Shown here: one piece after another, positions 10,759-50,584 of the stretch
Layout of the letters: each line of letters begins with the position of its first letter
Position numbering within the stretch: position 1 is the first letter of the stretch
Source: Mytilus edulis
Lineage: Eukaryota
Assembly (NCBI RefSeq): GCF_963676685.1
Contig: NC_092356.1
Location: forward strand, 26,412,001 to 26,476,000
Reading direction: 5' to 3'
DNA length: 64,000 nt
The notes under the pieces: generated by a model
The model's database searches: none
What the model was told of the DNA's origin: nothing
What the model saw: the letters and a program-made list of their open reading frames with translations, nothing else
Position numbers and translations under genes: made by a program

Positions 10759-10804
10759 ACGCCAGACGCGCGTTTCGTCTACATAAAGACTCATCAGTGA
10801 CGCT
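10759..10804 (-). ncRNA. Type I hammerhead ribozyme, intact core, within a retrozyme fragment (~10724-10990)
   Basis: Minus strand reads AGCGTCA-CTGATGA-GTC-TTTATGTA-GAC-GAAA-CGCGCG-TC-TGGCGT. Confidence 0.9.
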
Positions 10805-14557: not shown

Positions 14558-15795
14558 CGAATCCAAAAAAGTTAAAAAGGCCAACTAAAGTAGTTGAAGA
14601 GCATTAGTAATTGAATAGAGAAAAACGATTGGCGTTAATAAGATATCGTGTCATTTCCCAGACTATAAATCATTCATTCTATTTTATAAAATTGATGAGT
14701 TGACATTGTTGTATGCCTTCTAGTTCTTGTACTTTTTGGCTATGTAAGGTTTTGCAAGAAAATTAAAACATAACTGATTGTAATCAGTATCTTGTGTCTT
14801 TTGTCTTTATGTTAATTGTTTTTGTGCTTGATTACATTCTCCACTATGTTATACAGTTTGGTCTTTTGTTTTGTTGTTACAACATTTGACGTAGTTAGAA
14901 GGAGAGTTGAACGCTAACAAACATGTTTGACCATTCCATATTATATGTGCACATGTCCACATTCAGGATCCTGTAACTAAATGCGCAATAATTTATTTTT
15001 TCATGTTCGTAATATTAAAGAATACCCATTATAATACGGTAGCTAGGGGGTCTCTGTAAAACGCGGCGAAGGTTAGAACATCGTGACCACAGGAAGTTAC
15101 GACGACAATCATGATTGCAAAATATGTGGACAACTTTCGAGTTCAATGCATTTCCGTCAAAAAGTCAGGTTTTAGTGAAAATCATTCGTGCGTTTGGCAT
15201 CGTCACTTCCATTCCAATGTTGAGCGAGTGGCCGGGAAAACTATAATGTTATATTGCACGAATTATTCGGCAAATTAAATTCTAATAATTGTAATAAGCA
15301 CTGCTGTCATTAGGGCATTGTAATTAAGTTCTTACAAAACAAAAAATCTATTTCTTGTTGATCCTGCACAATGACAATTACAAAGACGCTTGATGAACAT
15401 TAATAGTGCAGGGATATAGGCGATCCCCTCTATCTGGTAAATGACGTCATAAAGGCTCTCATAATTGACGAGTTTTTTTCCGGTGATGGATGAACTCGAA
15501 AGTGGTCTATTTTGTAAATAAATTGAGACGTGTTGTATTCCGTTAACTTAAAATCCTTAACCAAATACCGCTTATGACACTGTGACCCTACTATAAGTAT
15601 TGTTGCATTTTTGAAACAAAAACATGAATTGACCAAAAAAAAGACTTCTTTTCAAAATCTTGTCAATATTTGCTTCAGATATCAGCAACGTTAACGGCTT
15701 AACTGAAAGTGATGATTTGCTTATCAACATTGTTAACAATTGTTAGTGTGAGAAAAACAAAAAAAGGTGCGTTTCTTTATAACTATTTTGATATG

Positions 15796-15840
15796 AGCGT
15801 CACTGATGAGTCTTATGTAGACGAAACACGCGTCTGGCGT
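15796..15840 (+). ncRNA. Type I hammerhead ribozyme (retrozyme fragment ~15775-15874)
   Basis: AGCGTCA-CTGATGA-GTC-TTATGTA-GAC-GAAA-CACGCG-TC-TGGCGT. Confidence 0.88.
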
Positions 15841-17163
15841 ATCAAATTATAATCCTGGTACCTTTGATAACTATCTATGTTCATTTTATTTCCAAACCTG
15901 TAGTATTGGACAGCATACATCTTTATTGATGGCAAGTATTTATCTATTTTAAACAACGACAAATTCTGCCAAAAAGAACTAGATACTAGATAAATGTCAC
16001 TGCCGAAATGTCCCAAGATGTGGTCAAGGAGCAAATTTCATCAAAACTCCAATGAGTATATGTCTCATATTTGCCTTTCACATAAGAGCAGAAATCTGTT
16101 TACGAGTTGTAGCAAATACAGTTTGTGATCAGATCTTTCAAACGACCATTTATTTTAAATTAATGGACACATTAAGTAATGATAATACAAAATGACAATA
16201 ATGATATCATTTCTGAGTTTATTGAATACAAAACTTTGCTTTTTTTTCTTATTGATGTCGTATTTTAAAAGCATCATGAAACGATTACTGACTTAAAAAA
16301 TAAAGATGTTATACATTGAATTATATGGATACAATACAAATACAGAGATTTCAAAATTAGAGGTCATAAGTGTTTTTTTTATGTATGTATATCTCTAAAG
16401 AATAGCAGCAGGATTTGTATCGTTGTATCTCGATTCCAGTAAAAAGATCTAACGAACGAAACATCTGAAGAAATAATGCATTAGTTTATCAAGAATCGCT
16501 TAGTTTACTCGGATTTTATCTAGACTAATGGACGCGGTATACATCATCACTGTTAATATTAGGATGTGCAACTTGTTTTCCACTGACAAAGTTAAACTTC
16601 CAAACGAAATTGGAATATCTATAAAAGAATTCAGAAAAGGATTTAAATTATTTGTAGGAATGAAATCCTTGACTTAATAATTTGCCAGTAAAACAATGAT
16701 CATGTTCATTAAATTCCAGGAGACACTGCAAAAAAGGTTAGGCGAATGAAATGGGATATATAAACACCGTACAATGATGCTTATAGAATATATCCGTCCA
16801 TAAAAAGAAAACAAAAAGATATATATATTTATTAAAGGTATTAAAGTCACATGATGTTGTAACGGTCAAGTGATTGTTCACTATAAACACGTGTGTATGT
16901 TTATATCAAGCACATGGTGTGTGTTTACGTTCAATTTGATTGCATGGCATATACCCGTATTGCCGGTTTAACGGTATATGCCCTCATGATTTTCGCGAAA
17001 AGCCTGATTAAGTATTACTTAAGGGGTTAGTTTAAGAAAATTAAGTTATTCGAAGTTTGCCTATAGTTCAACGTAGCAGCATTCATTATTATGTTTACCC
17101 TCCACCCCCCCCCCCCCACCCCCCTTTTATGAGATGGTTATCGTCAATGGGAGTATATGCATA

Positions 17164-24218: not shown

Positions 24219-25073
24219 TATTAAAAAAAAAAAAGAGGAAAATATAACAATTATATGATGTACATATCCATCTGTAGTCCTAACATCTGACTTTCATCTA
24301 ATGTTCAAGGTTCATTGATGAACGTAAATGGTTAATGATGTGGTCCGGTAAGGGCCGATTTTGGCCTTAAATTTAAAGTTCACCTGACGAAAGATTTTAG
24401 ACACTTTTTAAACGCTTAATTGTCTATTTCAGTTGATTCAATTAGTTTATGTGAAAGATTTTAACTGATTTACTCATTAAAAACGCTCCGATTCTAGCTT
24501 AAATATGAAAAATCTATCGAATATGCCAAACAATGTCACTTTTCAGATGGTTTTTGTCAAAAATGAAAGTGGCCGCATCCGTGTTCATCCTCAACCTTTA
24601 TATATGTTATGTATTATCAACAAATACAACTTGCATTTCAATATAAAGAATGAACACAAATGCGGCCACTTCCATTTAAGACGGAAACCGTCTAAAATTT
24701 AACTAAAATGCTAAAATTGTGAAGATTTCAGTAATTTAGCATGACTTAATGATGCTAGTACCCGATATATGTACATTGTATTGTCAAAAACTGCCCGTAT
24801 TTATGTAGCAGAAGCGTTCTAGTTTCCAATAAATAACTCAAAGATTACATTTTAACAATTTTGTAAAACTGCTGTATTTTGGGGCCAAAACGTGGTCTTA
24901 CTGAACCTACTCCATTCCAGTTTACTAATCTTTGATTTTTTTTCGAAAAACTAAGAGTTTTCTTATCCCAGGCATAGATTACCTTAGCCGTATTTGGCAA
25001 AACTTTTTGGAATTTTGGATCCTCAATGCTCTTCAACTTTGTACTTGTTTGACTTTATAAATATTTTGATATG

Positions 25074-25118
25074 AGCATCACTGATGAGTCTTATGTAGAC
25101 GAAACGCGCGTCTGGCGT
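25074..25118 (+). ncRNA. Type I hammerhead ribozyme (retrozyme fragment ~24925-25152)
   Basis: AGCATCA-CTGATGA-GTC-TTATGTA-GAC-GAAA-CGCGCG-TC-TGGCGT. Confidence 0.88.
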
Positions 25119-26576
25119 ACTAAATTATAATCCTGGTACATTTGATAACTATTTCATGGTTACGTCAGTTTTAAGATTTAATGAGAAACAAACCAACTAG
25201 ATATTTAGTGTGCATAATCATGTCTGTCACAAAATGTTTCAGTTGCCAATGCACCGTATTAGTTGGTTCAATATTGATCAACGTTCTTGTTTGATAAATT
25301 CTACTTTCGTTGATACGATGAGTGCTTTGGTGTATGAAACAATTTCGTCCGACTTGGATAACTGCCCTTTTGCTAGATCCATCATTCAGTTTCTCGTTTA
25401 TGCAAAACAATAATAATCTCATCACTTCAAAAGAAATAGGTCAACTATAATTGATTTTTAGAATAATTGTACGATGAATATTTTTGACAAGGTTCATCTT
25501 ACCTTGACATCCTAACCATTGCTATTTCGTCAACGTTGAGTGTTTTTGATTATGTCAATTTTTTAGATATAATAAGTTACTTTATCCTGTGTCATAAATT
25601 ATTGATAGGTGTGCATTTAATATAAAGAATGGAAACGGGGACTATGTCAAAGAGACAATAAACCGACCAAAGATCGGAAAACAACCCGATACAGTCAAAG
25701 GGTTGTCAATACAGTGAAACATCCACACCAGAAGCAGGCTTCAGCTGGCCACGGGACAATAATGTAGTACAGAATACATATGTATAGTTCAGCGAAATGA
25801 ACGCCACACTCAAACTCTGCAACTTATAAATTAACCAAACTTTTTTTTTAAATACCACTCAATACTTATAAAGGCTAGAGATTCCTGGCTTAAGACAGTG
25901 ATCGAACGATTTCAACCTTCTCCTATACATCTAGCCAATGTTGAATGAACAAACAATCAGCAACACGCACACTAAAAGACAGTTTAAAAGAAGTCCGATG
26001 GTAGAATAAGTAATAGATGAAACAAAGCAAAATGACAATGATCAACATAAAGTAATAAAGGACTACTGTAGTTACTAGTATATCAGCTCCAGACCTCAAC
26101 TAAATTGTTAAGTGTGGTAACAGTTTCTATATGTGGAAATTTCGAATGGGTCTAGTGTTTGCCCAAATTTATGTCTATCGGGGATCATTTTCACTTCTTT
26201 TTAATCTAAAATTTACAGTATAACGGATGGATGTGAATATTTTGACGCTAAAAAAATCTAGTCGATTTTTTACAATTAATGCGTAAACATGACGACACAA
26301 ATGCATTCATTGATGTTAATGTTTATGATAAAGAAACAAAGGCAACATTATGATGCGCCTGTCGTACAAGTGAGAGGTTAAGCGCTATAAAACCAGGTTC
26401 AATCCACCATTTTCTATATTTGTACCAAGTCAGGAATAAGACAGTTTTTGTCAATTCGTTTGATGTGTTTTATCTTATGATGTTGCCATTAGATAAGGGA
26501 CTTTCGTTTTTTGAATTTTCCTCGAAGCTCAGTATTTTGTGATTTTACTTTTTTATTATTTATTTTTTATACTTAC

Positions 26577-27494: not shown

Positions 27495-27539
27495 AGCGTC
27501 ACTGATGAGTCTTATGTAGACGAAACGCGCGTCTGGCGT
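27495..27539 (+). ncRNA. Type I hammerhead ribozyme, perfect consensus (retrozyme fragment ~27454-27572)
   Basis: AGCGTCA-CTGATGA-GTC-TTATGTA-GAC-GAAA-CGCGCG-TC-TGGCGT; predicted cleavage after GUC at 27533. Confidence 0.92.
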
Positions 27540-41030: not shown

Positions 41031-42957
41031 TCAATCAGTTTCGCATATAAACACTTTGCCAATTTGATAGCATGTAACAAGGAACTGGTTGATGTTTTTC
41101 TTGAAACGTATAACATATGGTCTTTTTATTCCTATACTACCAACTGGAATAATTCTTACCAGTTTACCATCCTTATCCAGTTGGTGTAAATTACTTGTAC
41201 CATTCCCACATATATAAACATTTCCATCTCGGTCTATGTCTATACCTCTCTGATTTGAAAATTTATCGCTTTTGTAAGTAAAGACTTTCGCATTATTTAC
41301 CATTTTAGATACCGATTTCCCGTCTGTGCAAATGTAATCTTTTCTGCTGTTTGCGTGAATGTAATAAGTGTCCCCATTTGTTGATGTTTGTTCAATTTTG
41401 GCACCAGAGGTAGCATTTATCCAGGTTAAAGTATTTTCATAAGCAAGAATAAATTCCCCATTGACATGGCAAAATCCATGAACGTAATAAAGCACTTCAA
41501 TTTTACGGCACTGAATCATTTTCTGTATATCAACAACAAACAATGTTTTATTTTCTGTTGACACAGCAGCCGTCGTGTCAGTCAATTGAACTATGTCAAA
41601 AGGTTTGTTTGGTAAACTCAGATCTGTGAGACAGCATCCGTTGTGGTTATATTTCAACACTTTCGATAACTTATGGTGGGTAAAGATAAGGTCACTGTTT
41701 ATAAAAATGCCACTTAGATATACATTATTTCCAGTGAGGTCAATAACTCTAATAACATTAATATTTCCCGTGTGAAAATTTACTGTTTTCCTAAACAAAA
41801 AATTCGGACAACTTGCGTCAGTTTCAATCACTTTAACAAGCCCTATAGCTGCGACTTTTTTCGAAAAATGTACAGCTATATCATTAGCTTCTAAAAAAAT
41901 GGAAACATTTTTCATTTCGCTTATACATTTCTTGAGTATATCACCAAAGTTGTCCTTATTTTCGTTTATTCTATTCATTTCTAACAAACACTGCAATTCG
42001 GAACCATGATGTAAACAGGTATCAAATATAGCAATCCAGTTATCAACAGTACTTTTCAGACTTTCGAGTTCTGCAGACTTTTCGAAAAGTTTCAGACCTA
42101 CTTCCTTTTTCGATTTGTTTATTTCGTCCTTTATTTGACCTTCAATAATGTTTAAATGCTTAACAATATTATCCTTTATAGTACTGACTTTTGTAAGAAT
42201 AACTTCAGCCTCTTTTTGGTAATCGGTCCTGAGGTCTTTCCTGTTTTGTATTAAATCGGATAGCTGTTTGCTAGTCTCTTTTAATTCTGTAGACAATTTC
42301 GTTGCTTTTTCTTATTTTTTTATACCTGAGACAGCCGCTTCGATTGTTACGACATCTTCGCATTTCCTGTGTAATAAAGTCGCGCATAATGTACATAAAG
42401 GTTTAGAATGATCAACGCAATAAGCCTGCACCACCTCTCCGTGGTGTTCTTCGCAATATATCAATGACGAAATGTTTTCTGTTTCCTTGTTAGCTACAAG
42501 GTCATTCAATAATATTATCGGGTGTTTTGCTGTCATCTGAAACGATTTGTGACATTGTTCAAAAGATTTACAAAACGCTTCTTCGCATACAATATACCAA
42601 GATAACGCTTTTTTAGTTTTGTTGTTCGCTTTGCAAGAGTCGCATATTTTTTTCGCTTCTTTTTAATGCTTGTCTATCCATCATCGAAGCAACAAAATGG
42701 TTACCTGGTAATTTTTCGGCCCAGGTCTCCGGATTACCTGTTGACTCTCCCATCAAAATATCCTGTCTACATATTGGACACTTAAACGTTGTTCCAATTT
42801 TCTCCTTGTCTACGGTAGACAGAATGTCAGTCTTGATGCATGTCTTGCAGAAAGTATGGAGACATGGTAAATATTTTGGACCTGAAAAGGTCTCCAAGCA
42901 TATGGTACACGTCAATAAATCATCGAAATTGTCTGCTTTGTCCTGTGCAGTCGCCAT
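41031..42957 (-). pseudogene. TRIM-like E3 ligase pseudogene (RING, B-boxes, coiled coil, NHL-like beta-propeller)
   Basis: Collinear with 46179-48113. It has a +1 frameshift in an A-run at ~42650, an in-frame TAA at 42312-42314, and two B-box1 Cys substitutions (WC>WY, ACE>SFE). Confidence 0.9.
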
Positions 42958-43138
42958 CTTTTATGACTGGACTTTAAAAACTTCCTTGTCATGCTAGATA
43001 AACATGTAGGTTATATACGATGTATGTTTAAATATACCAGGTAAACAATTTTAAATGCACTTAGCCGTTATGATATCATTTGAACTTATAATATCGTCAA
43101 CCGTACCAACAACAAAACAAACGACGACAGTTAATGAA

Positions 43139-44430
43139 TGCAGACCGATTATTTCTCAATGTAACCTCTGTCACCGAAAGGGTTACCAAATTTATTAATT
43201 ACTTTTTTATACCTATAGTTAAAAGACAGAACAGTTACATTAGAGATAGTGGGGATTTCATAAATAAAATAGAAAGTTTAAGGCCTGATCGGGATTGCCT
43301 CTTAGTTTCTTTTGACTGCACCAGCATGTATACAAACATGGAGTTCAATGAACTCATTCATTCTGTTGGACGGGCTTATAAGAGTGCAGTAAAAGAAGAT
43401 TATCCGATAAAACTACCTAGCTGTGAAACAATTAAATCGTTAGTAGCCACAGTGATGAAAAACAATTATTTTGAATTTAATGACCGATACTTTGTACAGA
43501 AAATAGGCGCTAGTATGGGAAGTAGATGCAGCCCAGAAATTTGTGATATTAGAGCATTCGAAGTTATCAATGAAATTATTGAAAAATATAAGTATAAAAA
43601 TAATATCTTATTTTACGGAAGGTATAGAGATGATGCGTTTATAATAGCTCATTCATCACGAGAAGAAGTTTCGGAGTTTTTTAAAATAGCAAATGATCAT
43701 CACCCTTTATTAAAGTTTACGTTTGAAATTTCAAACGAAGAAATTATCTTTCTCGATACAGTCGTACATAAAGGGTTGAGGTTCAGGAACACCGGTATCC
43801 TTGATATTAAGAGCTACACCAAACCTACAAATACGTTTCAATATTTAGATAGGACGTCTATGCATAACCCAACACTCTTCTCCGGATTTATAAAAGGGGA
43901 AGCTATTCGCCACCACCGAAACAACAGCAACACGCAAAATTTAAAAGATACTCTTTGTAAATTCAAAGGCCATCTTAAGCAAAGGGGATATAAGGACCTT
44001 GAAATACTTCGTAACTGTGAATCGGCTCTCAATATCGAACGACCAGAGTTACTCCGCTTTAAACAAGAATCTGACAAGCAGATACCACTAGTATTTGTAA
44101 CTAAATATCACTTCTCGTTAGGAAATATAAATAAAGCTTTACGAAAACATTATAAAAAACTAGTTCGCAATGCAAAATATAGGGAGCTATTTCCATAACC
44201 ACCAATGGTGGCGTATAGTAGACATCGGAACTTAAAAGAAATACTGACTAGATCGGTAGTCAAAGCTTAGTACAATATGAAGGATTGGGTCAGGACCCCT
44301 GATGAAGCACCCACCCTTCATATGAGCCACGGAATATTATAGAGTTTGTCCTATTCTGTACTGCAGAAACACGATGTGTTGGGTCCTGGAGAATAGGCAA
44401 ACGTGGCTGATAGATACTTCCAGACCTTCA
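43139..44430 (+). mobile_element. 5'-truncated Penelope-like element (PLE): RT + thumb, no C-terminal GIY-YIG, 3' hammerhead
   Basis: RPIISQCN (one frameshift), LVSFDCTSMYTN, QKIGASMGSRCSP, YGRYRDD, FLD, YTKPT..FQYL...S.H. A premature TAA lies at 44196-44198; reading on gives PPMVAYSRHRNLKEILTRSVVKA* ending at 44270. Confidence 0.9.
44291..44388 (+). ncRNA. PLE-associated type I hammerhead ribozyme with enlarged loop II
   Basis: Stem I CAGGACCC (44291-98) / GGGTCCTG (44381-88); core CTGATGA (44299-305); stem II GCA/TGC; GAAA (44366-69); stem III CAC-GAT-GTG; cleavage triplet GUU ending at 44380. Confidence 0.8.
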
Positions 44431-44610
44431 ACATGTCAAAGTACGGACTTTAATACGGAGCCTTGGCTCACACCGAACATAAAGCTATAACGTGCTCTGA
44501 AAATTGCAAGTTTAAAATCATTTAAACAGGAGATCAACGGTCTAATTAGATAAAACAAAAACGAGAAACACTTATGATAGTTATCAAAGGTACCAGGCTT
44601 ATAATTTAAT

Positions 44611-44655
44611 ACGCCAGACGCACGTTTCGTCTACACAAGACTCATCGGTGCCGCT
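44611..44655 (-). ncRNA. Degenerate hammerhead (core CCGATGA) in a retrozyme fragment (~44577-44700)
   Basis: Minus strand reads AGCGGCA-CCGATGA-GTC-TTGTGTA-GAC-GAAA-CGTGCG-TC-TGGCGT. Confidence 0.75.
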
Positions 44656-46178
44656 CAGATAAAAATAGTTAGAAACCCAAACAAGTACAAAGGACCCAGA
44701 ACCACATAAACAAACGAAAACCACTGAAAATCATGTTCCTGACGCAAACAAATGAAGCGGGATTAAACGTTTTGATATGTACCAACTTTTATCCTTACCT
44801 GAAAAAAAGTGTAAAATCACGATATAGACACACTATAAAATATCAATAAAAATGTTTAACTCAATTAAAAAAAACATGAATATGGAAGATAACAAAATCA
44901 TATATTGACCATGTTTTTGCTGACCATCATATAAAGGAAAATGTGAATCTATAGAAATCAACATTGTATATTAAGTAAATAGTCGTACGTGCAAATAAAT
45001 AAAAATGAATCGATAAAATAATCTAATTGATTCAAATTGTGTAAGTACTAAATAAGTCTCATTTTATCATATAATAATAAGATATATTAAGGCCCCTTGC
45101 TGTTTCATTTATTTCTTTGATTGTATGTTATCGTATTTTGTAATTTACTTCTTGTTTCAATGTGACGGAGTGTTTTTAAAATAAAGCATATTGTATTGTA
45201 TTGTTATACCTTGTTCGCAAATTACAAGGTATCACAACTCATTAATACGACATATTTTGAAATACCTTTAAATAATATTTGGACAAAATAATCAAACTGT
45301 ATCATAAATATGATTTGATAAAATATATAAATGATAATAACAAAATTATCTTTTCTCTTTTTTCCAATTTTATTTAATTTCCAAATTTCACTTCATTTGC
45401 TTAACTCTATACAAAGAGAGATAACTCAAGAATTTCTAGTGTAAAATTTGACATGTTTCAAAATTTCAATTGCTTAACTTTATATTAAGAGAGATAACTC
45501 AAAAACATTTCTAATGTAATTTTTGACATGTTACACTTGTATATAGTTTTGTTCATTTTGGTTTGATTTTTCCCTTTAGATTTTCTCTTTTTGAATAACT
45601 TTTCCCATTTCTCTGTTTACTTCAAAGTTATATAAATTATTGTTGTTTCAATACGCATGATACAATGAGATAAGACCACACTATTTATCTTGTGGTCAGT
45701 GATTAACAGCTGGACACTGGCATCAACAGATGATTGACATATTAGCCCCTCCTAAATGCCTATATATTTAGATTAATTACCATGTGATTTTATTTACATG
45801 AGTTCAGTATCAATGTACTCCCTGTTGCGATATGATAATGATTTTTGGATTTTTACAAACTGTGCAGAATAATACTTACTTCAAAATTATGTGATAAAAA
45901 AAATATCTTAATATAATCACTGCTAGACTGTAGTGCTACTTTAACGCAACTTAACCATTTTTCAATACAGCGAATTTGATTTTACAAGCTGAGATATATT
46001 TACAATGTAAAGTAAACATAATGTAGTTAAAACAACAAATTTTGTCAAATAAAAGACAAACCATTTATTGCTATGGCACAATAATTGATTAAAAAAAATC
46101 TTATTTTGTAACTTGTGTTACAGAAACTTAAACTGCTTTTAATGATAGTTTTAAAGACAATTTCATCTTTGAAATGTC

Positions 46179-48113
46179 TTAAGAAATTTCACAAAGTGCT
46201 ACTCTTCCCGTCCTAATACAAGTTACGAAAAACATTTTGCTGTTGTTTTTGAATCGAATTATCCAAGGTTCTTCTAATCCAATTGCTTTAGCGTCAAATG
46301 TACGAATTAGCTTGCCATCCTTTGAAAGTTGGTGTATGTTTTTTGAATTATATCCACAAATATATATGTTTTCATCACAATCCTTAGAAATACCTCTAGG
46401 CAATGCAAGTGTTTTATTGTTATATACCATTGTTTTATTTCTAGGTTTTGCAATGATTATTTCGTTTCGCCCATTTCCGCATATATAATCGTTTGTGCTG
46501 CCTGCCCAAACAAACCAACTTTCGCCGCTTGTTGTTTTTGTTTTTATTCGTGCTCCTGATGAGGCATTAATCCACGTGATACACGTATCGTTCACGCCAA
46601 TTAATGTACCGTCTGTGTATGCTATACCATAAATTACAGAATCAATGGTAAGTGTTTGTAATAAATTCATTTTCTTCATATCTATTATAAAAACGAACTG
46701 TTCTCCTGTCGACACCACGGCTCTTTGTTTGTCCGTCGGTGAAATGTCATAGGTTTGTTTAGGAAGAGCAAGTGTGCAAAGTGTGGATCCGTTTTGATTA
46801 AATTTTACCACCTTCGAGTCATTATACACGACAAACAATAATTCAGTCTCGAAGAATATTCCACTAGTATGACCAAATCGACATTGGAGTTGAATAGTTC
46901 GCAATAGTTTCACATATTCTGTTGGATAATTTAAAGATTGATTTACTTCTGATTGATGATAAGCACTATCTAATTTACTCTCGGAAATGCTTATGTGACC
47001 AAGAGAATTAATTTTATCTCGAAATTGCACGAAATCTTTGTCATCTGTGAAATTTATGGTCATATCCTGAATTTTAGAAATGTTTTGTGAAAAGTCCTTA
47101 TCGAAAGTTGCTTTGTTGCCAGAAATTTTGTTTATTTCAAACAGACATTGCTGATCAGAACCGTGTTTCAAACATGTTTCCGTTAGCGATATCCAGTTAA
47201 CTATTGTACTTTCGAGGCTTTCTAATTTTGCTGCATCATTTGATACGGCTAATTCTATCTGTTTTTTAGATTTTGATATTTCTGCATTAATTTTGTCTTC
47301 TTTTTCACTGATCTGTTTGAATAAATCTTGTCTAATACATTTAACTTTGTCCTGCATTTCGGATGCGTCATTTTTACATTTTGCTAACAGTTCTTTACGA
47401 TTCTTAATTAAGGCCTTTAATACTTCTCTCTTTTGTTTAAGATTTTCTACAAATTGTGCTGTTTGCTTAGAATCCTTGATACCTGAAGCTGCATTCTCAA
47501 TCGAAATTACTTCGTCACATTTTCTATGCGCTAACGTTGCACATAATGTACATAAGGGTTTACTATGTTGAACACAGTAAATCTTAATTATCTCTTCCGC
47601 ATGTTCTTCACAGCTTAGTATTGTTGAAATGTTCGACTTCTCATTTGTTGTTGAAAATTCTTTCAGTAATACTAACGGGTGTTTTGCACTAATCTTAAAG
47701 GATTTATGGCATATTTCGCACGCCTTGCAGAACGCCTCTTCGCATACTGGACACCACGACAATGCAAGTTCGGATTTATTGTTCAACTTACACGAATCAC
47801 ACATTTTTTCGCTTCTTTTAATTGCTTGTCTATCCATCATTGAAGCAACGAAATGGTTACCTGGTAGTTTTTCGGCCCAGGTCTCCGGTTGACCTGGTGA
47901 CTCTCCCATCAAAACATCCTGTCGACATATCGGACACTTAAACGTTGTTCCAATTTTCTCCTTGTCCAAGGTAGACAGAATGTAAGTGTTTATGCATGTC
48001 TTGCAGAACGTATGCAGACATGGTAAATATTTTGGTGTTGTAAAGGTCTCCAAACATATTGTACATGTCAATAAATCATCTAAAGTGTCTGTTTTGACCT
48101 GTGCAATCGCCAT
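46179..48113 (-). CDS. TRIM-like E3 ubiquitin ligase, 644 aa, single coding exon (RING, B-box1, B-box2, coiled coil, NHL-like beta-propeller)
   Basis: C3HC4 RING CTICL...LPCLHTFCKTC...CPICR; B-box1 CDSC...CPVCEEAFCKACEICH...H; B-box2 CEEH...CVQH...CTLC...HRKC; heptad-rich middle; C-terminal PRGISKDCDENIYIC-type repeats. Confidence 0.95.
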   Translation of the reverse strand: MAIAQVKTDTLDDLLTCTICLETFTTPKYLPCLHTFCKTCINTYILSTLDKEKIGTTFKCPICRQDVLMGESPGQPETWAEKLPGNHFVASMMDRQAIKRSEKMCDSCKLNNKSELALSWCPVCEEAFCKACEICHKSFKISAKHPLVLLKEFSTTNEKSNISTILSCEEHAEEIIKIYCVQHSKPLCTLCATLAHRKCDEVISIENAASGIKDSKQTAQFVENLKQKREVLKALIKNRKELLAKCKNDASEMQDKVKCIRQDLFKQISEKEDKINAEISKSKKQIELAVSNDAAKLESLESTIVNWISLTETCLKHGSDQQCLFEINKISGNKATFDKDFSQNISKIQDMTINFTDDKDFVQFRDKINSLGHISISESKLDSAYHQSEVNQSLNYPTEYVKLLRTIQLQCRFGHTSGIFFETELLFVVYNDSKVVKFNQNGSTLCTLALPKQTYDISPTDKQRAVVSTGEQFVFIIDMKKMNLLQTLTIDSVIYGIAYTDGTLIGVNDTCITWINASSGARIKTKTTSGESWFVWAGSTNDYICGNGRNEIIIAKPRNKTMVYNNKTLALPRGISKDCDENIYICGYNSKNIHQLSKDGKLIRTFDAKAIGLEEPWIIRFKNNSKMFFVTCIRTGRVALCEIS

Positions 48114-48327
48114 TTTAGATTGCTGGACTTTAAACGTCCTTGTAATGTTAGATTAACATGTAGGTTATCTACGATCTATATTTAGATATACCAGATAGAT
48201 AAACTTAAATGCACTAAGCTGATATCATTTGAATTCGTTATATCGCCAAAATGACCCTATAATAAAACCTTGTTTTTTTAAGATATATTTTCTTTTTGTA
48301 TCATATTATCCTTATTATGTAGGTAAT

Positions 48328-50584
48328 CTGGTAAAAAAAGATAGACAGCCTGAATGGTACAATAAAGAAATCTCATATGCAAGAAAAATGAGAGATAAAT
48401 ATCACTCACTGGGAATGTGGGCTGAATATAGATTCTGGAGAAACAGAACAAAACATGTTATTGATAAATCTAAACAGAAATATTATAATGATATGATAAA
48501 AGACTCAAAAGATTCTAAAACACTATGGAAATGTATTCACAGCCTAAATCCATCTAATCCATCAAAACCACATGAACTTATTACAACTGGAGACCATAAA
48601 ACAACCGATAATAAAGAAATTGCTAATACGTTCAATAATTATTTCACCTCATGTGTTGAAAAATTAAGGCATAGTAGGGCACCAATCAACTCAAATTTTA
48701 ATACTCTGACAAACTATGTACAAATGAAATTCTTGAAAAAAAGGCATAATAAATTCATCATTCATCCAGTAAAAGTTTCAGAACTATTTGCTGAAATAAC
48801 TAAACTAGATGTTAAGACATCTTCTGGTACTGACAATATAGGTCCTAAGATTTTAAAAACTTAGTGCTCCTTTCATAGCATCTTCCTTAACATACATTTT
48901 TAATCGAATGATTGATACTGGTATTTATCCATCTGTTTTAAAAAATGCCAAAGTAGCTCCAATTTTCAAATCTGGTGAAAAAAATGTAGCTAGCAATTAC
49001 AGACCAATATCTGTTTTGCCAACATTATCAAAATTAATTGAGAGACATGTATCAAAACATCTTTATAAATATTTAACAAAGTTTGATATTTTACACCCTT
49101 CCCAGTCTGGTTTTAGACCCAACCATTCATGTCAAACTGCCCTCATTAATATTATTGATAAATGGCTACACGAAATGAATAATGGAAATATCAATTTGGC
49201 AGTCCTCTTGGATTTTAAGAAAGCTTTTGATGTTGTTGATCATGAAATTCTATGTAAAAAACTTCTTATTTATGGCTTCCATGAAGATACTGTTAATTTT
49301 TTAAAATCATATTTGAGTGAAAGAACACAGCAAGTCCATATAAATAATCAGTTTTCTAATAAAAAGTTTATAAATTTTGGTGTTCCACAGGGCTCAATAC
49401 TTGGTCCCATTTTGTTTGTTTTGTTCATAAATGACCTTCCATTACACATTAAAAACTGCCATACAAACTTGTATGCTGATGACACAACTATGCATACATC
49501 AGGAAAGACTATTGGTGACATGCAATTAAAAGTACAAGATGATCTCCAATGTGTTGAAAAATGGTGTCATGAAAATAGCATGTTCATAAATTCAGATAAG
49601 ACGAAATGTATGGTTATAGGTACAAGAAAAAGGCTGCGTTTAAATCAAGCAGATCCAGTTCTAACTATTGAGAATAATATTCTTCAAAAATCATCAATTG
49701 AAAAACTTTTAGGTGTTAGAATTGACTCTAATCTGTCCTGGACAGGCCATATTAATTACTTATGTTCATCAATTTCATCAAGAATTTTTTTACTCTCTAA
49801 AATCAAGAAATTTCTAAATATTGATCTAAGAAAATTATTTTATAATGGTTATATTCTCCCACTGATAGATTATTGTTGTATTATTTGGAGTGGTTGTGCT
49901 AAAAATGAGCTAGTCAGAATAATAAAATTGCAAAAAAGGGCTGCAAGACTTATTTTAGATGCTGATCCACTTTCATCATCAGCTCCACTGTTTAAACAGC
50001 TTGGATGGATGACAGTTGAGAACAGAATCTCATACCACAAATCAGTTTTGATGCATAAATGTCTTAAGAATGAAGCCCCTGTATATCTCACTGAAAAGTT
50101 TAAAGAAATGCCAGAAATAAACCAATATTGTTTGAGAAATGCCTCTTGCAAAAATTTACAAGTTCCAAAAGCCAAAACAGAGCTTTATAAGAAATCTTTT
50201 ATATATTCAGGATCTATTTTATGGAATAACTTACCAATATCCCTGAAAAGATCAACCTCAAGTACAAGCTCATTCAAAAAAGATTTAAAAAATTACTTGA
50301 TGGAACATTACGAAGCTGTGCGTTTTTTTATATGCATAATAATTTTCACACACTTACTCAAACTTATGATATTGTTGATGCCAATACTATACATGTCATA
50401 TATGAATTTGTAACTTTTACCTGTTTTGAAAATTGTATATTTCATAACAATTTTTTATTTCATTATTCATGTATGTGTGTCTGTTTGATATTTTGTATTT
50501 GTTTGTTATATTTCATTGTATTTTATGAGGGCCTCAGGGAAGATTAGCTTTACAGCTAACTGTGTAACCCTCTTTAAATAAAGA

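What the first reader, a model, noticed from the sequence alone, without database searches (positions are those of the whole stretch)
44275..44408. Hammerhead whose enlarged loop II can pair with both flanks of stem I
Seen: a type I core with a ~50-nt loop II. The 5' part of the loop (ACCCA 44309-13, CCTTCATAT 44315-23) is complementary to the 5' flank (TGGGT 44286-90, ATATGAAGG 44275-83). The rest of the loop (AGCCACG 44325-31, TTTGTCCTATTCT 44345-57) is complementary to the 3' flank (CGTGGCT 44402-08, AGAATAGGCAAA 44390-401, one bulge). An A-A juxtaposition closes stem II, and stem III is a real hairpin rather than a dimer palindrome. Established: PLE hammerheads are usually minimal, and stem I-II tertiary contacts boost cleavage. 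Inference: long Watson-Crick bridges replace those contacts. The 3' bridge would also hold the 3' product after cleavage, which could favour ligation or RT priming, or act as a conformational switch.
Basis: partly seen in the sequence, partly recalled or inferred. Interest (0 to 1): 0.85.

Follow-up and report, generated by a model that had tools for sequence, protein, structure and literature searches.

The report
Pseudoknotted hammerhead ending a mussel retroelement
This is a real hammerhead-ribozyme motif at the tail of a dead copy of an endonuclease-less Penelope-like retroelement in a mussel genome. Its 5' "bridge" is a pseudoknot conserved across the whole element superfamily, so it is a new variant of a known kind, and cleavage is untested.

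Summary

- **Context.** The motif is the 3' end of a 5'-truncated, broken copy (43107-~44433) of a retroelement with at least 42 copies in this Mytilus edulis-like genome. Its reverse transcriptase (RT) is Penelope-like but lacks the GIY-YIG endonuclease.
- **Relatives.** Ten sister families (RT 38-47% identical) carry a hammerhead in the 3' UTR: five type I directly after the stop codon, five in permuted type III form. Stems I, II and III covary across all eleven.
- **5' bridge.** The segment just 5' of stem I pairs with the start of loop II at the same place in all 11 families, with different sequences (Fisher P about 2e-7). This is the known pseudoknot type of stem I/II contact; here it is lengthened to 5+9 bp.
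- **3' bridge.** It appears only in this family and its sister family, with unrelated sequences. It is plausible but weaker.
- **This family's core is the weakest.** Stem II has 3 bp, an A·A sits next to the core, and the site is GUU.
- **Not shown.** Rfam does not recognise the motif.
- Other first-stage notes on this genome, unchecked, describe similar pseudoknotted hammerheads.

Verdict: real, and a new variant of a known kind.

The parts
43107..44433 (+). 5'-truncated, dead copy of an endonuclease-less Penelope-like retroelement (family F1)
   Evidence: At least 42 genomic copies at 86-100% identity. The 3' end is always at 44432-44436 while 5' ends vary. Longer copies continue upstream in frame.
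43134..44270 (+). Remnant of the reverse-transcriptase ORF. It has an 8-bp deletion near its start and an in-frame TAA at 44196-44198. The family stop codon is TAG at 44268-44270.
   Evidence: Pfam RVT_1. Homologues are ~646-aa proteins with no GIY-YIG domain; the nearest endonuclease-bearing kin have it at the C-terminus. Comparison with longer copies.
44275..44290 (+). 5' bridge, flank strand: distal 9 nt (44275-44283) and proximal 5 nt (44286-44290), directly abutting stem I
   Evidence: Exact complement of 44309-44313 and 44315-44323. The proximal part sits where all 11 families have a pseudoknot.
44291..44298 (+). Stem I, 5' strand
   Evidence: 8 bp with 44381-44388. Stem I positions 1-5 are paired in 11/11 families with 2-3 pair types each.
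44299..44305 (+). Hammerhead core CUGAUGA (C3-A9)
   Evidence: Present in 10 of 11 family representatives; one has CUAAUGA.
44306..44309 (+). A44306 (faces A44365), then the 5' strand of stem II (GCA)
   Evidence: An extra nucleotide after A9 occurs in 7 of 11 families; U·U occupies this position in two.
44309..44323 (+). 5' bridge, loop II strand (ACCCA, C, CCTTCATAT)
   Evidence: Pseudoknot partner by position.
44325..44357 (+). 3' bridge, loop II strand: 7 nt (44325-44331) and 13 nt (44345-44357), separated by a 13-nt unpaired stretch
   Evidence: Hairpin B in the minimum-energy fold.
44362..44368 (+). Stem II 3' strand (UGC), A44365, and core G12-A13-A14
44369..44380 (+). Stem III hairpin (A15.1-U16.1 plus 3 bp, loop GAU) and U17. 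The predicted cut lies between 44380 and 44381.
   Evidence: Stem III positions 1-5 are paired in 11/11 families. All F1 copies sampled read GUU at the site.
44381..44388 (+). Stem I, 3' strand (start of the predicted 3' cleavage product)
44390..44408 (+). 3' bridge, flank strand (12 nt + 7 nt)
   Evidence: The sister family F2 has a different helix pair in the same relation.
44381..44433 (+). Tail of ~52 nt from the predicted cut to the 3' end of the element. In two other loci it runs straight into the 5' region of a next copy.
   Evidence: F2 has a 55-nt tail of the same kind.

Best explanation
**What it is.** The stretch is the 3'-UTR hammerhead ribozyme of a family (F1) of Penelope-like retroelements. 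These elements encode a ~650-aa reverse transcriptase and no endonuclease. The window copy is a truncated, dead insertion.

**Superfamily pattern.**
- In five sister families the ribozyme sits directly after the stop codon as a monomeric type I hammerhead. In five others it lies further downstream as the permuted type III form.
- It has a stable stem III, usually an extra base after A9, and a long loop II.

**The 5' bridge.** It is the superfamily's conserved pseudoknot. The nucleotides just outside stem I pair with the first nucleotides of loop II, which holds stems I and II side by side. This is the known pseudoknot way of making the tertiary contact. In F1 it has grown from the usual 4-7 bp to 5+9 bp.

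**The 3' bridge.** It is a younger addition shared with sister family F2. It ties the ~52-nt tail that follows the cut site to loop II.

**Inferred, not shown.**
- In read-through transcripts of tandem or partial-tandem copies, the ribozyme cuts 52 nt before the next copy's 5' region.
- Stem I plus the 3' bridge (about 27 bp) then keep the two ends together. The RNA can therefore still serve as one template or be re-ligated.
- F1's core is weakened (A·A, 3-bp stem II, GUU). The long bridges may compensate for that.
For: **The motif and its copies**
- Core, stems and complements are present as described.
- At least 42 copies share one fixed 3' end.

**The element**
- The RT is homologous to ~646-aa proteins of Mytilus, Pinctada, Saccostrea and Argopecten that have no GIY-YIG domain.
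- The nearest endonuclease-bearing relatives are canonical RT-then-GIY-YIG proteins.

**The hammerhead across families**
- Ten sister families (RT 38-47% identical) have a hammerhead in the 3' UTR.
- Stems I, II and III are paired in 11/11 families at core-proximal positions, with compensatory changes.

**The pseudoknot**
- It lies within 0-3 nt of both stems in all 11 families, with different sequences: TGACAG/CTGTCA, ATATAGG/CCTATAT, TATTGG/CCAATA, ACGTGG/CCACGT, GAGGCTT/AAGCCTT.
- Fisher combined P is 2e-7 for all families and 2e-5 for nine distinct ones.
- Pseudoknot contacts are documented and mutationally tested in hammerheads of all three types (PMC3088659).

**The 3' bridge**
- F1 z = -2.9; F2 z = -3.0 to -3.6, with unrelated sequences.

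**Tandem arrangement**
- Tail-to-5'-region junctions occur in F1.
- Multi-unit arrays with periods of 2566 or ~3800 bp occur in sister families.
- Two junctions in one F2 locus start exactly at the predicted cleavage product.
Against: **Cleavage is unproven**
- Rfam models do not score any of these motifs.
- No genomic F1 copy begins at the cut site.

**F1 has the weakest core of the 11 families**
- It has no G10.1-C11.1 pair, a 3-bp stem II and U17.

**Fold competition**
- Nested folding favours the two bridge hairpins over the hammerhead by 15.3 kcal/mol.
- Having both at once needs a double pseudoknot that closes stems I and II into a four-helix ring. Steric feasibility was not evaluated.
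- In published work, lengthening stem I or II around a pseudoknot lowered activity (PMC3088659).

**The 3' bridge is thinly supported**
- It is absent from F3-F5.
- Within-family changes show no compensatory pairs.
- F1's C-rich loop also pairs well with F2's flank.

**Role in transposition**
- Hammerhead mutants did not affect insertion in vitro in the one Penelope-like element studied (PMC11167929).
Confidence: 0.6

Rival explanations
1. Relic ribozyme. In F1 the hammerhead is no longer catalytic. The two long hairpins (44275-44323 and 44325-44408) are the working structure of the 3' UTR, for example the part the reverse transcriptase recognises. The hammerhead core survives only as sequence inside their loops.
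For: - F1 alone combines A·A at 10.1/11.1, a 3-bp stem II and GUU.
- The minimum-energy fold is the two hairpins, 15.3 kcal/mol better than the hammerhead-enforced fold.
- The bridges are far longer than the 4-7 bp pseudoknots of the other families.
- No F1 copy starts at the cut site.
- The family still spread to at least 42 copies.
Against: - All core nucleotides, stem I (8 bp) and stem III are intact in most of the 31 distinct copies, so the master copy carried them.
- The bridges and the hammerhead stems use separate nucleotides, apart from A44309 and U44290, so they need not compete.
- Non-canonical 10.1/11.1 pairs occur in two other families whose hammerheads are otherwise good.
Confidence: 0.22
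2. Conformational switch. The hammerhead folds and cuts during transcription, before the 3' flank has been made. The RNA then refolds into the two stable hairpins. That shuts the ribozyme off and protects the ligated or circular form, as proposed for viroid-like RNAs.
For: - Order of synthesis: the partner of the 3' bridge (44390-44408) is transcribed only after the whole hammerhead.
- The hairpin fold is thermodynamically dominant in F1 and F2.
- Published work on animal retrozymes notes that circular forms must somehow block their ribozyme (PMC7229834).
Against: - The 5' bridge is the conserved activating pseudoknot, not an inhibitor, in the other nine families.
- Forming the bridges does not remove any hammerhead stem nucleotide, so refolding is not forced.
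- There are no kinetic or probing data.
Confidence: 0.13
3. Chance resemblance: a structured AT-poor patch that happens to contain CUGAUGA and GAAA.
For: Rfam finds no hammerhead here even at E<=10.
Against: - The same architecture lies in the 3' UTR of ten sister families, with covarying stems.
- Shuffle tests argue against chance.
- Rfam also misses those better-formed relatives. Its silence therefore reflects the long loops.
Confidence: 0.02

Closest known systems
Hammerheads of Penelope-like elements (Cervera and de la Pena 2014, PMC4209133; Arkhipova lab work on Athena/Terminon elements)
   Same: - A hammerhead carried by a Penelope-like retroelement, in the terminal repeat or 3' region.
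- Type I topology.
[quoted passage not shown]
- Tandem, inverted and 5'-truncated copies.
- Endonuclease-less elements of fungi and protists are reported to carry monomeric hammerheads with a large helix III.
   Different: - Animal Penelope-like hammerheads are described as minimal, with a 1-2 bp palindromic helix III that works as a dimer.
- Here stem III is a 4-7 bp hairpin and loop II is 37-126 nt.
- A Watson-Crick pseudoknot is present.
- The ribozyme starts a few nucleotides after the stop codon of an endonuclease-less RT.
- Sister families switch between type I and type III.
Pseudoknot-stabilised hammerheads (Perreault et al. 2011, PMC3088659)
   Same: - A 4-7 bp Watson-Crick helix links the stem I side to the stem II side in place of loop-loop contacts.
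- It is reported for all three topologies and shown by mutation and rescue to be needed for fast cleavage.
   Different: - The F1 pseudoknot is 5+9 bp.
- A second 12+7 bp helix joins the other end of loop II to the 3' flank.
- No published case known to me has both flanks of an open stem I paired to one loop II (from memory, not searched exhaustively).
Animal non-LTR retrozymes (Cervera and de la Pena 2020, PMC7229834; 2026 preprint 10.64898/2026.07.22.740005)
   Same: - Type I hammerheads in tandem repeats of mussels and corals.
- Unit-length RNAs are cut out and circularised.
- They are proposed to derive from, or be mobilised by, Penelope-like elements.
- Two canonical retrozyme hammerheads lie in this very window.
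   Different: - Retrozymes are 170-400 nt and non-coding, with compact hammerheads that Rfam recognises.
- The present elements are 2.5-3.8 kb, encode the RT themselves, and have a different, long-looped hammerhead.
Naiad/Chlamys and Hydra clades of Penelope-like elements (Craig et al. 2021, PMC8557442)
   Same: They are abundant in bivalves. That paper notes hammerhead cores or half-cores that do not fit the stem/loop descriptors.
   Different: - Naiads have an N-terminal GIY-YIG, a CxC motif and DKA.
- Hydra elements have a C-terminal endonuclease and DKT.
- The proteins here have no endonuclease on either side, and the representative translated reads DKS at that motif.

Membership tests
Hammerhead ribozyme, type I | Core C3-U4-G5-A6-N7-G8-A9, and G12-A13-A14 followed by A15.1 | tested here: met
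   CUGAUGA at 44299-44305 and GAAA at 44366-44369.
Hammerhead ribozyme, type I | Cleavage triplet N-U-H with the A15.1-U16.1 pair | tested here: met
   G44378-U44379-U44380; A44369 pairs with U44379. H is U rather than the commonest C. All F1 copies read GUU; relatives read GUC, GUA or AUA.
Hammerhead ribozyme, type I | Three helices around the core, with stem I open and stems II and III closed | tested here: met
   Stem I 8 bp, stem III 4 bp, stem II only 3 bp. All three covary across 11 families.
Hammerhead ribozyme, type I | G10.1-C11.1 pair next to the core (near-universal, not absolute) | tested here: not met
   A44306 faces A44365. Families F10 and F11 have U·U there; F2-F5 have an extra U and then G-C.
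Hammerhead ribozyme, type I | Match to the curated covariance model (Rfam RF00163) | tested here: not met
   No hit at E<=10. The control hammerhead at 27496-27539 scores 33 bits against a gathering score of 34. Better-formed relatives are also missed, so the long loop II is the likely cause.
Hammerhead ribozyme, type I | Self-cleavage at the predicted site | not testable with these tools
Genomic junctions give no F1 support and only two F2 junctions at one locus.
Pseudoknot-type tertiary contact of hammerheads | Watson-Crick helix of 4 bp or more between the stem I side and the stem II side, kept by covariation | tested here: met
   Present within 0-3 nt of both stems in 11/11 families with different sequences. 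Combined P is 2e-7.
Pseudoknot-type tertiary contact of hammerheads | Activity depends on the helix (disruption and rescue) | not testable with these tools
   This needs cleavage assays.
Penelope-like element | Penelope-type reverse transcriptase | tested here: met
   RVT_1 domain, plus homology at about 30% identity to RT-GIY-YIG proteins of fish and frog. No phylogeny was built.
Penelope-like element | GIY-YIG endonuclease in the same ORF | tested here: not met
   No GIY-YIG in the 646-659 aa ORFs. The ORF stops where the linker to the endonuclease would begin. Endonuclease-less clades are accepted members of the class (PMC8557442).
Penelope-like element | Partial tandem and inverted copies (pseudo-LTRs) and 5' truncation | tested here: met
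Animal retrozyme | Small non-coding tandem unit expressed as circular RNA | tested here: not met
   Units are 2.5-3.8 kb and encode the RT. Circularity was not testable.

The most novel reading that the evidence does not exclude
These endonuclease-less elements may be autonomous, RT-encoding counterparts of retrozymes.

- The hammerhead cuts unit-length RNA out of tandem copies.
- Stem I plus the 3' bridge (about 27 bp in F1 and F2) clamp the new 5' and 3' ends together, so they are re-ligated into a 2.5-3.8 kb circular RNA.
- Rolling-circle reverse transcription of that circle would produce the multi-unit arrays seen in the genome.

On this reading the enlarged, doubly bridged loop II is a built-in ligation splint rather than a cleavage aid.
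Probability: 0.2. Interest if true: 0.8.

Novelty: new variant of a known kind. Interest (0 to 1): 0.5.

Why it matters
- **A gap in the animal picture.** Animal Penelope-like elements are described as carrying minimal, dimer-dependent hammerheads. The most abundant bivalve clade is reported to lack canonical ones. Here a whole set of mussel families has full-size monomeric hammerheads that standard descriptors and Rfam miss because of their long loops.
- **A natural covariation series.** The set shows one tertiary pseudoknot kept through type I/type III permutation. That makes it a useful comparative series for how the contact constrains stem lengths.
- **A testable link to retrozymes.** If the 3' bridge proves functional, it would be a simple RNA device for keeping or rejoining cleavage products. 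It would also make the proposed link between Penelope-like elements and retrozymes experimentally tractable.
- **Limit.** The window copy itself is a dead insertion with no expected effect on the host.

Tried and rejected
**Searches that found nothing**
- Rfam at gathering and at permissive thresholds found no hammerhead here or in ten relatives. A positive control worked.
- Of 80 metagenome loci encoding relatives, only one (the same family, L081) has this hammerhead. The cnidarian relatives have a different motif.

**Tests that gave little or no signal**
- Genomic copies starting at the cut site: none for F1; two junctions at one locus for F2.
- Within-family covariation of the bridges: copies are too alike, and their changes look like random decay.
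- The swap test for the 3' bridge was not clean. F1's C-rich loop also pairs with F2's G-rich flank.
- Per-family shuffle tests of the short pseudoknots are individually weak. Only the position-constrained combined test is strong.

- Two pattern searches were mistyped by one base and are void.

**Readings rejected**
- Naiad membership: no N-terminal endonuclease and no CxC motif.
- The recurrent 150-bp partial copy starting at 44284 as a structure-driven stop. By that point the reverse transcriptase would already have copied the partner strand.

Full report
**Observation**

- Stem I: 44291-44298 pairs with 44381-44388 (8 bp).
- Core: CUGAUGA at 44299-44305.
- A44306 faces A44365.
- Stem II: 44307-44309 pairs with 44362-44364 (3 bp).
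- GAA at 44366-44368.
- Stem III: 44369-44372 pairs with 44376-44379 (4 bp, loop GAU).
- U44380 is the residue before the predicted cut.

The eight bridge segments are exact complements, with one bulged T. Loop II is 52 nt by my parser.

Shuffle controls argue against chance. Loop II against the 3' flank gives -27.0 kcal/mol versus -16.8 +/- 3.5. Loop II against the 5' flank gives -18.3 versus -11.8 +/- 2.9.

**Context**

- The window is part of a 1.37-Gb genome. A protein hit annotated Mytilus edulis lies on a contig of exactly the length of this genome's contig C8.
- The motif ends a repeat with at least 42 copies at 86-100% identity.
- The 3' end is fixed at about 44432-44436 and the 5' ends vary. 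This is the pattern of target-primed reverse transcription.
- The window copy spans 43107-~44433. It has an 8-bp deletion near its start relative to longer copies and an in-frame stop at 44196-44198. The family's own stop codon is at 44268-44270, five bases before the 5' bridge begins.
- The ORF is a reverse transcriptase. Full-length relatives are ~646-659 aa, have no GIY-YIG domain and, in the representative translated, read DKS where Penelope-like proteins have DKG.
- Their database homologues are uncharacterised ~645-aa proteins of mussels, pearl oysters, oysters and scallops. The nearest endonuclease-bearing relatives (about 30% identity; fish, frog, metagenomes) have RT followed by a C-terminal GIY-YIG.
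- This is therefore an endonuclease-less relative of canonical Penelope-like elements, not a Naiad.
- Copies occur as partial tandems, inverted pairs and multi-unit arrays with periods of 2566 or ~3800 bp. In two loci the F1 tail runs directly into the 5' region of a next copy.

**Family comparison**

I collected the 3' regions of ten sister families from this genome (RT 38-47% identical to F1).

| Families | Topology | Position | Main features |
|---|---|---|---|
| F2-F6 | Type I | 14-27 nt after the stop | Stem I 5-6 bp; CUGAUGA (CUGAAGA in F6) followed by an extra U in F2-F5; 5-bp stem II; loop II 37-126 nt; stem III 6-7 bp; GUC or GUA site |
| F7-F11 | Type III (permuted) | 160-440 nt after the stop | Loop I of 30-80 nt |

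Anchored on the core, base pairing holds as follows:
- Stem I positions 1-5, stem II positions 1-2 and stem III positions 1-5 are paired in 11 of 11 families.
- Each position shows two to five pair types, including full compensatory changes.

The F1 motif is thus homologous to a ribozyme kept under selection while the surrounding loops diverged beyond alignment.

F1 has the weakest version:
- It has A·A where G10.1-C11.1 usually lies, a 3-bp stem II and U at position 17.
- The A·A is not unique. F10 and F11 have U·U there, and seven families carry an extra nucleotide after A9.
- That extra nucleotide matches the bulged base described as usual for hammerheads of Penelope-like elements (PMC4209133).

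**The 5' bridge**

- In every family the nucleotides just 5' of stem I pair with the first nucleotides of loop II, within 0-3 nt of both stems.
- The sequences differ between families: TGACAG/CTGTCA, ATATAGG/CCTATAT, TATTGG/CCAATA, AGGCT/GGCCT, GAGGCTT/AAGCCTT, ACGTGG/CCACGT, GGCT/AGCC.
- A position-constrained shuffle test gives Fisher P = 2e-7 for all 11 families and 2e-5 for nine with distinct sequences.
- In the type III families the same helix is a loop I/loop II pseudoknot.
- Perreault et al. described and tested this contact by mutation and rescue in hammerheads of all three types (PMC3088659).
It is a known principle.
- What is unusual in F1 is its length: a 5-bp proximal helix plus a 9-bp distal one.

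**The 3' bridge**

- Only F1 (z = -2.9) and its sister F2 (z = -3.0 to -3.6) have significant pairing between the end of loop II and the 3' flank. F6 is marginal, and F3-F5 show nothing.
- F1 and F2 use unrelated sequences, which argues for selection rather than inheritance.
- The evidence rests on two families.
- F1's C-rich loop also pairs well with F2's G-rich flank.
- Within-family changes are too few to be informative: a few wobble-preserving changes, several breaks and no double changes.

**Can bridges and ribozyme coexist?**

- The bridges and the hammerhead stems use separate nucleotides, apart from A44309 and U44290.
- Both together would make a double pseudoknot in which stem I, the 5' bridge, stem II and the 3' bridge close a ring.
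- Nested folding cannot represent this. It prefers the two bridge hairpins by 15.3 kcal/mol in F1 and 13.4 in F2, against 0-6.5 in F3-F6.
- By order of synthesis, the 5' pseudoknot and the whole hammerhead are made before the 3' flank. Cutting could therefore precede 3' bridge formation (inference).
- I could not evaluate the three-dimensional feasibility.

**Activity**

- There is no direct evidence of cleavage.
- No genomic F1 copy starts at the cut site.
- In F2, two junctions at one locus begin exactly at the predicted 3' product. This is suggestive but thin.
- In the one Penelope-like element studied biochemically, hammerhead mutants did not affect insertion in vitro (PMC11167929).

**Most likely mechanism**

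- Shown: the motif, its homology, covariation of the three stems and of the pseudoknot, and the tandem junctions.
- Inferred: the ribozyme trims read-through transcripts of tandem copies 52 nt before the next 5' region. The pseudoknot sets the active fold. In F1/F2 the 3' bridge with stem I holds the two products together, which would favour re-ligation or continued use as one template.
- Rivals, in order: a relic ribozyme whose hairpins are the working 3' UTR structure; a cut-then-refold switch; chance.

**Novelty**

Known already:
- Hammerheads in Penelope-like elements.
- Pseudoknot contacts in hammerheads.
- Retrozymes in mussels.

Not found in the papers I searched:
- This endonuclease-less bivalve clade with long-looped monomeric hammerheads in its 3' UTR, in about half the families directly after the stop codon.
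- The type I/type III alternation among sister families.
- A loop II paired to both flanks.

Craig et al. report that relaxed descriptors failed on some bivalve elements that have cores or half-cores (PMC8557442). That fits Rfam missing all of these while finding a canonical retrozyme hammerhead in the same window.

Other first-stage notes on this genome describe type III hammerheads with long loop I and a predicted pseudoknot. They are unchecked, but they agree with what I saw on other loci.

**Verdict**

The finding is real and a new variant of a known kind. The 5' bridge is well supported, the 3' bridge is plausible, and catalysis is untested.

Noticed in passing
window 27496-27539 (+) and 10759-10803 (-); related fragments at 44577-44692, 15755-15876 and 25033-25154: These are canonical compact type I hammerheads of the mussel retrozyme kind (stem II 4 bp, loop 5-6 nt, GUC). 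One scores 33 bits against Rfam RF00163, just under the gathering score of 34, so the default Rfam scan of the window reported nothing.
   Followed up: partly
L082-L160 (coral and other metagenome contigs), the first 40-90 nt after the RT stop codon: Endonuclease-less relatives from cnidarian-associated metagenomes end their ORF at the same point. They have no CUGAUGA. Most share a conserved motif of the form GGGAGTC-N-GTG-N3-4-GGCCTGTC, preceded by AGGC/AGGT right after the stop. There is no Rfam match at E<=0.1. It may be a different 3' RNA element.
   Followed up: partly
L076 (G000:C8:63788290-63788450, minus strand): Two short extra copies of the F2 tail begin exactly at the predicted hammerhead cleavage product (GGGTCC...). 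They are joined to the previous tail by 2 nt or by a short piece of 5' region. This is what would be expected if cDNA synthesis ran to the 5' end of a cleaved RNA and then jumped.
   Followed up: partly
G000:C8:63780921-63787054, C8:78283552-78297888, C12:50110836-50116955, C5:23372275-23380936: These are head-to-tail arrays of three or more complete RT-plus-hammerhead units with periods of 2559-2566 bp (F2) or about 3800 bp (F4).
   Followed up: no
window 44284-44433, and three other loci (C3:20493691-20493840, C5:67587457-67587606, C11:29998597-29998746): A 150-bp partial copy with the same 5' breakpoint at 44284 recurs beside or away from longer copies, in tandem or inverted. 44284 lies in the 2-nt gap between the two helices of the 5' bridge. 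The cause is not established.
   Followed up: no
window 42613-42957 (-), 46179-48113 (-); repeats 42648-43081 and 47804-48235: Two paralogous RING/B-box (TRIM-like) genes have 81-90% identical first exons and upstream regions. Each has a retroelement inserted head-to-head just upstream: F1 at 43107, and an unrelated RT ORF at 48908-50413.
   Followed up: no
L080 (family F9): This type III hammerhead reads CUAAUGA in its core (G5 to A) and is otherwise intact. It is probably an inactivated copy or family.
   Followed up: no
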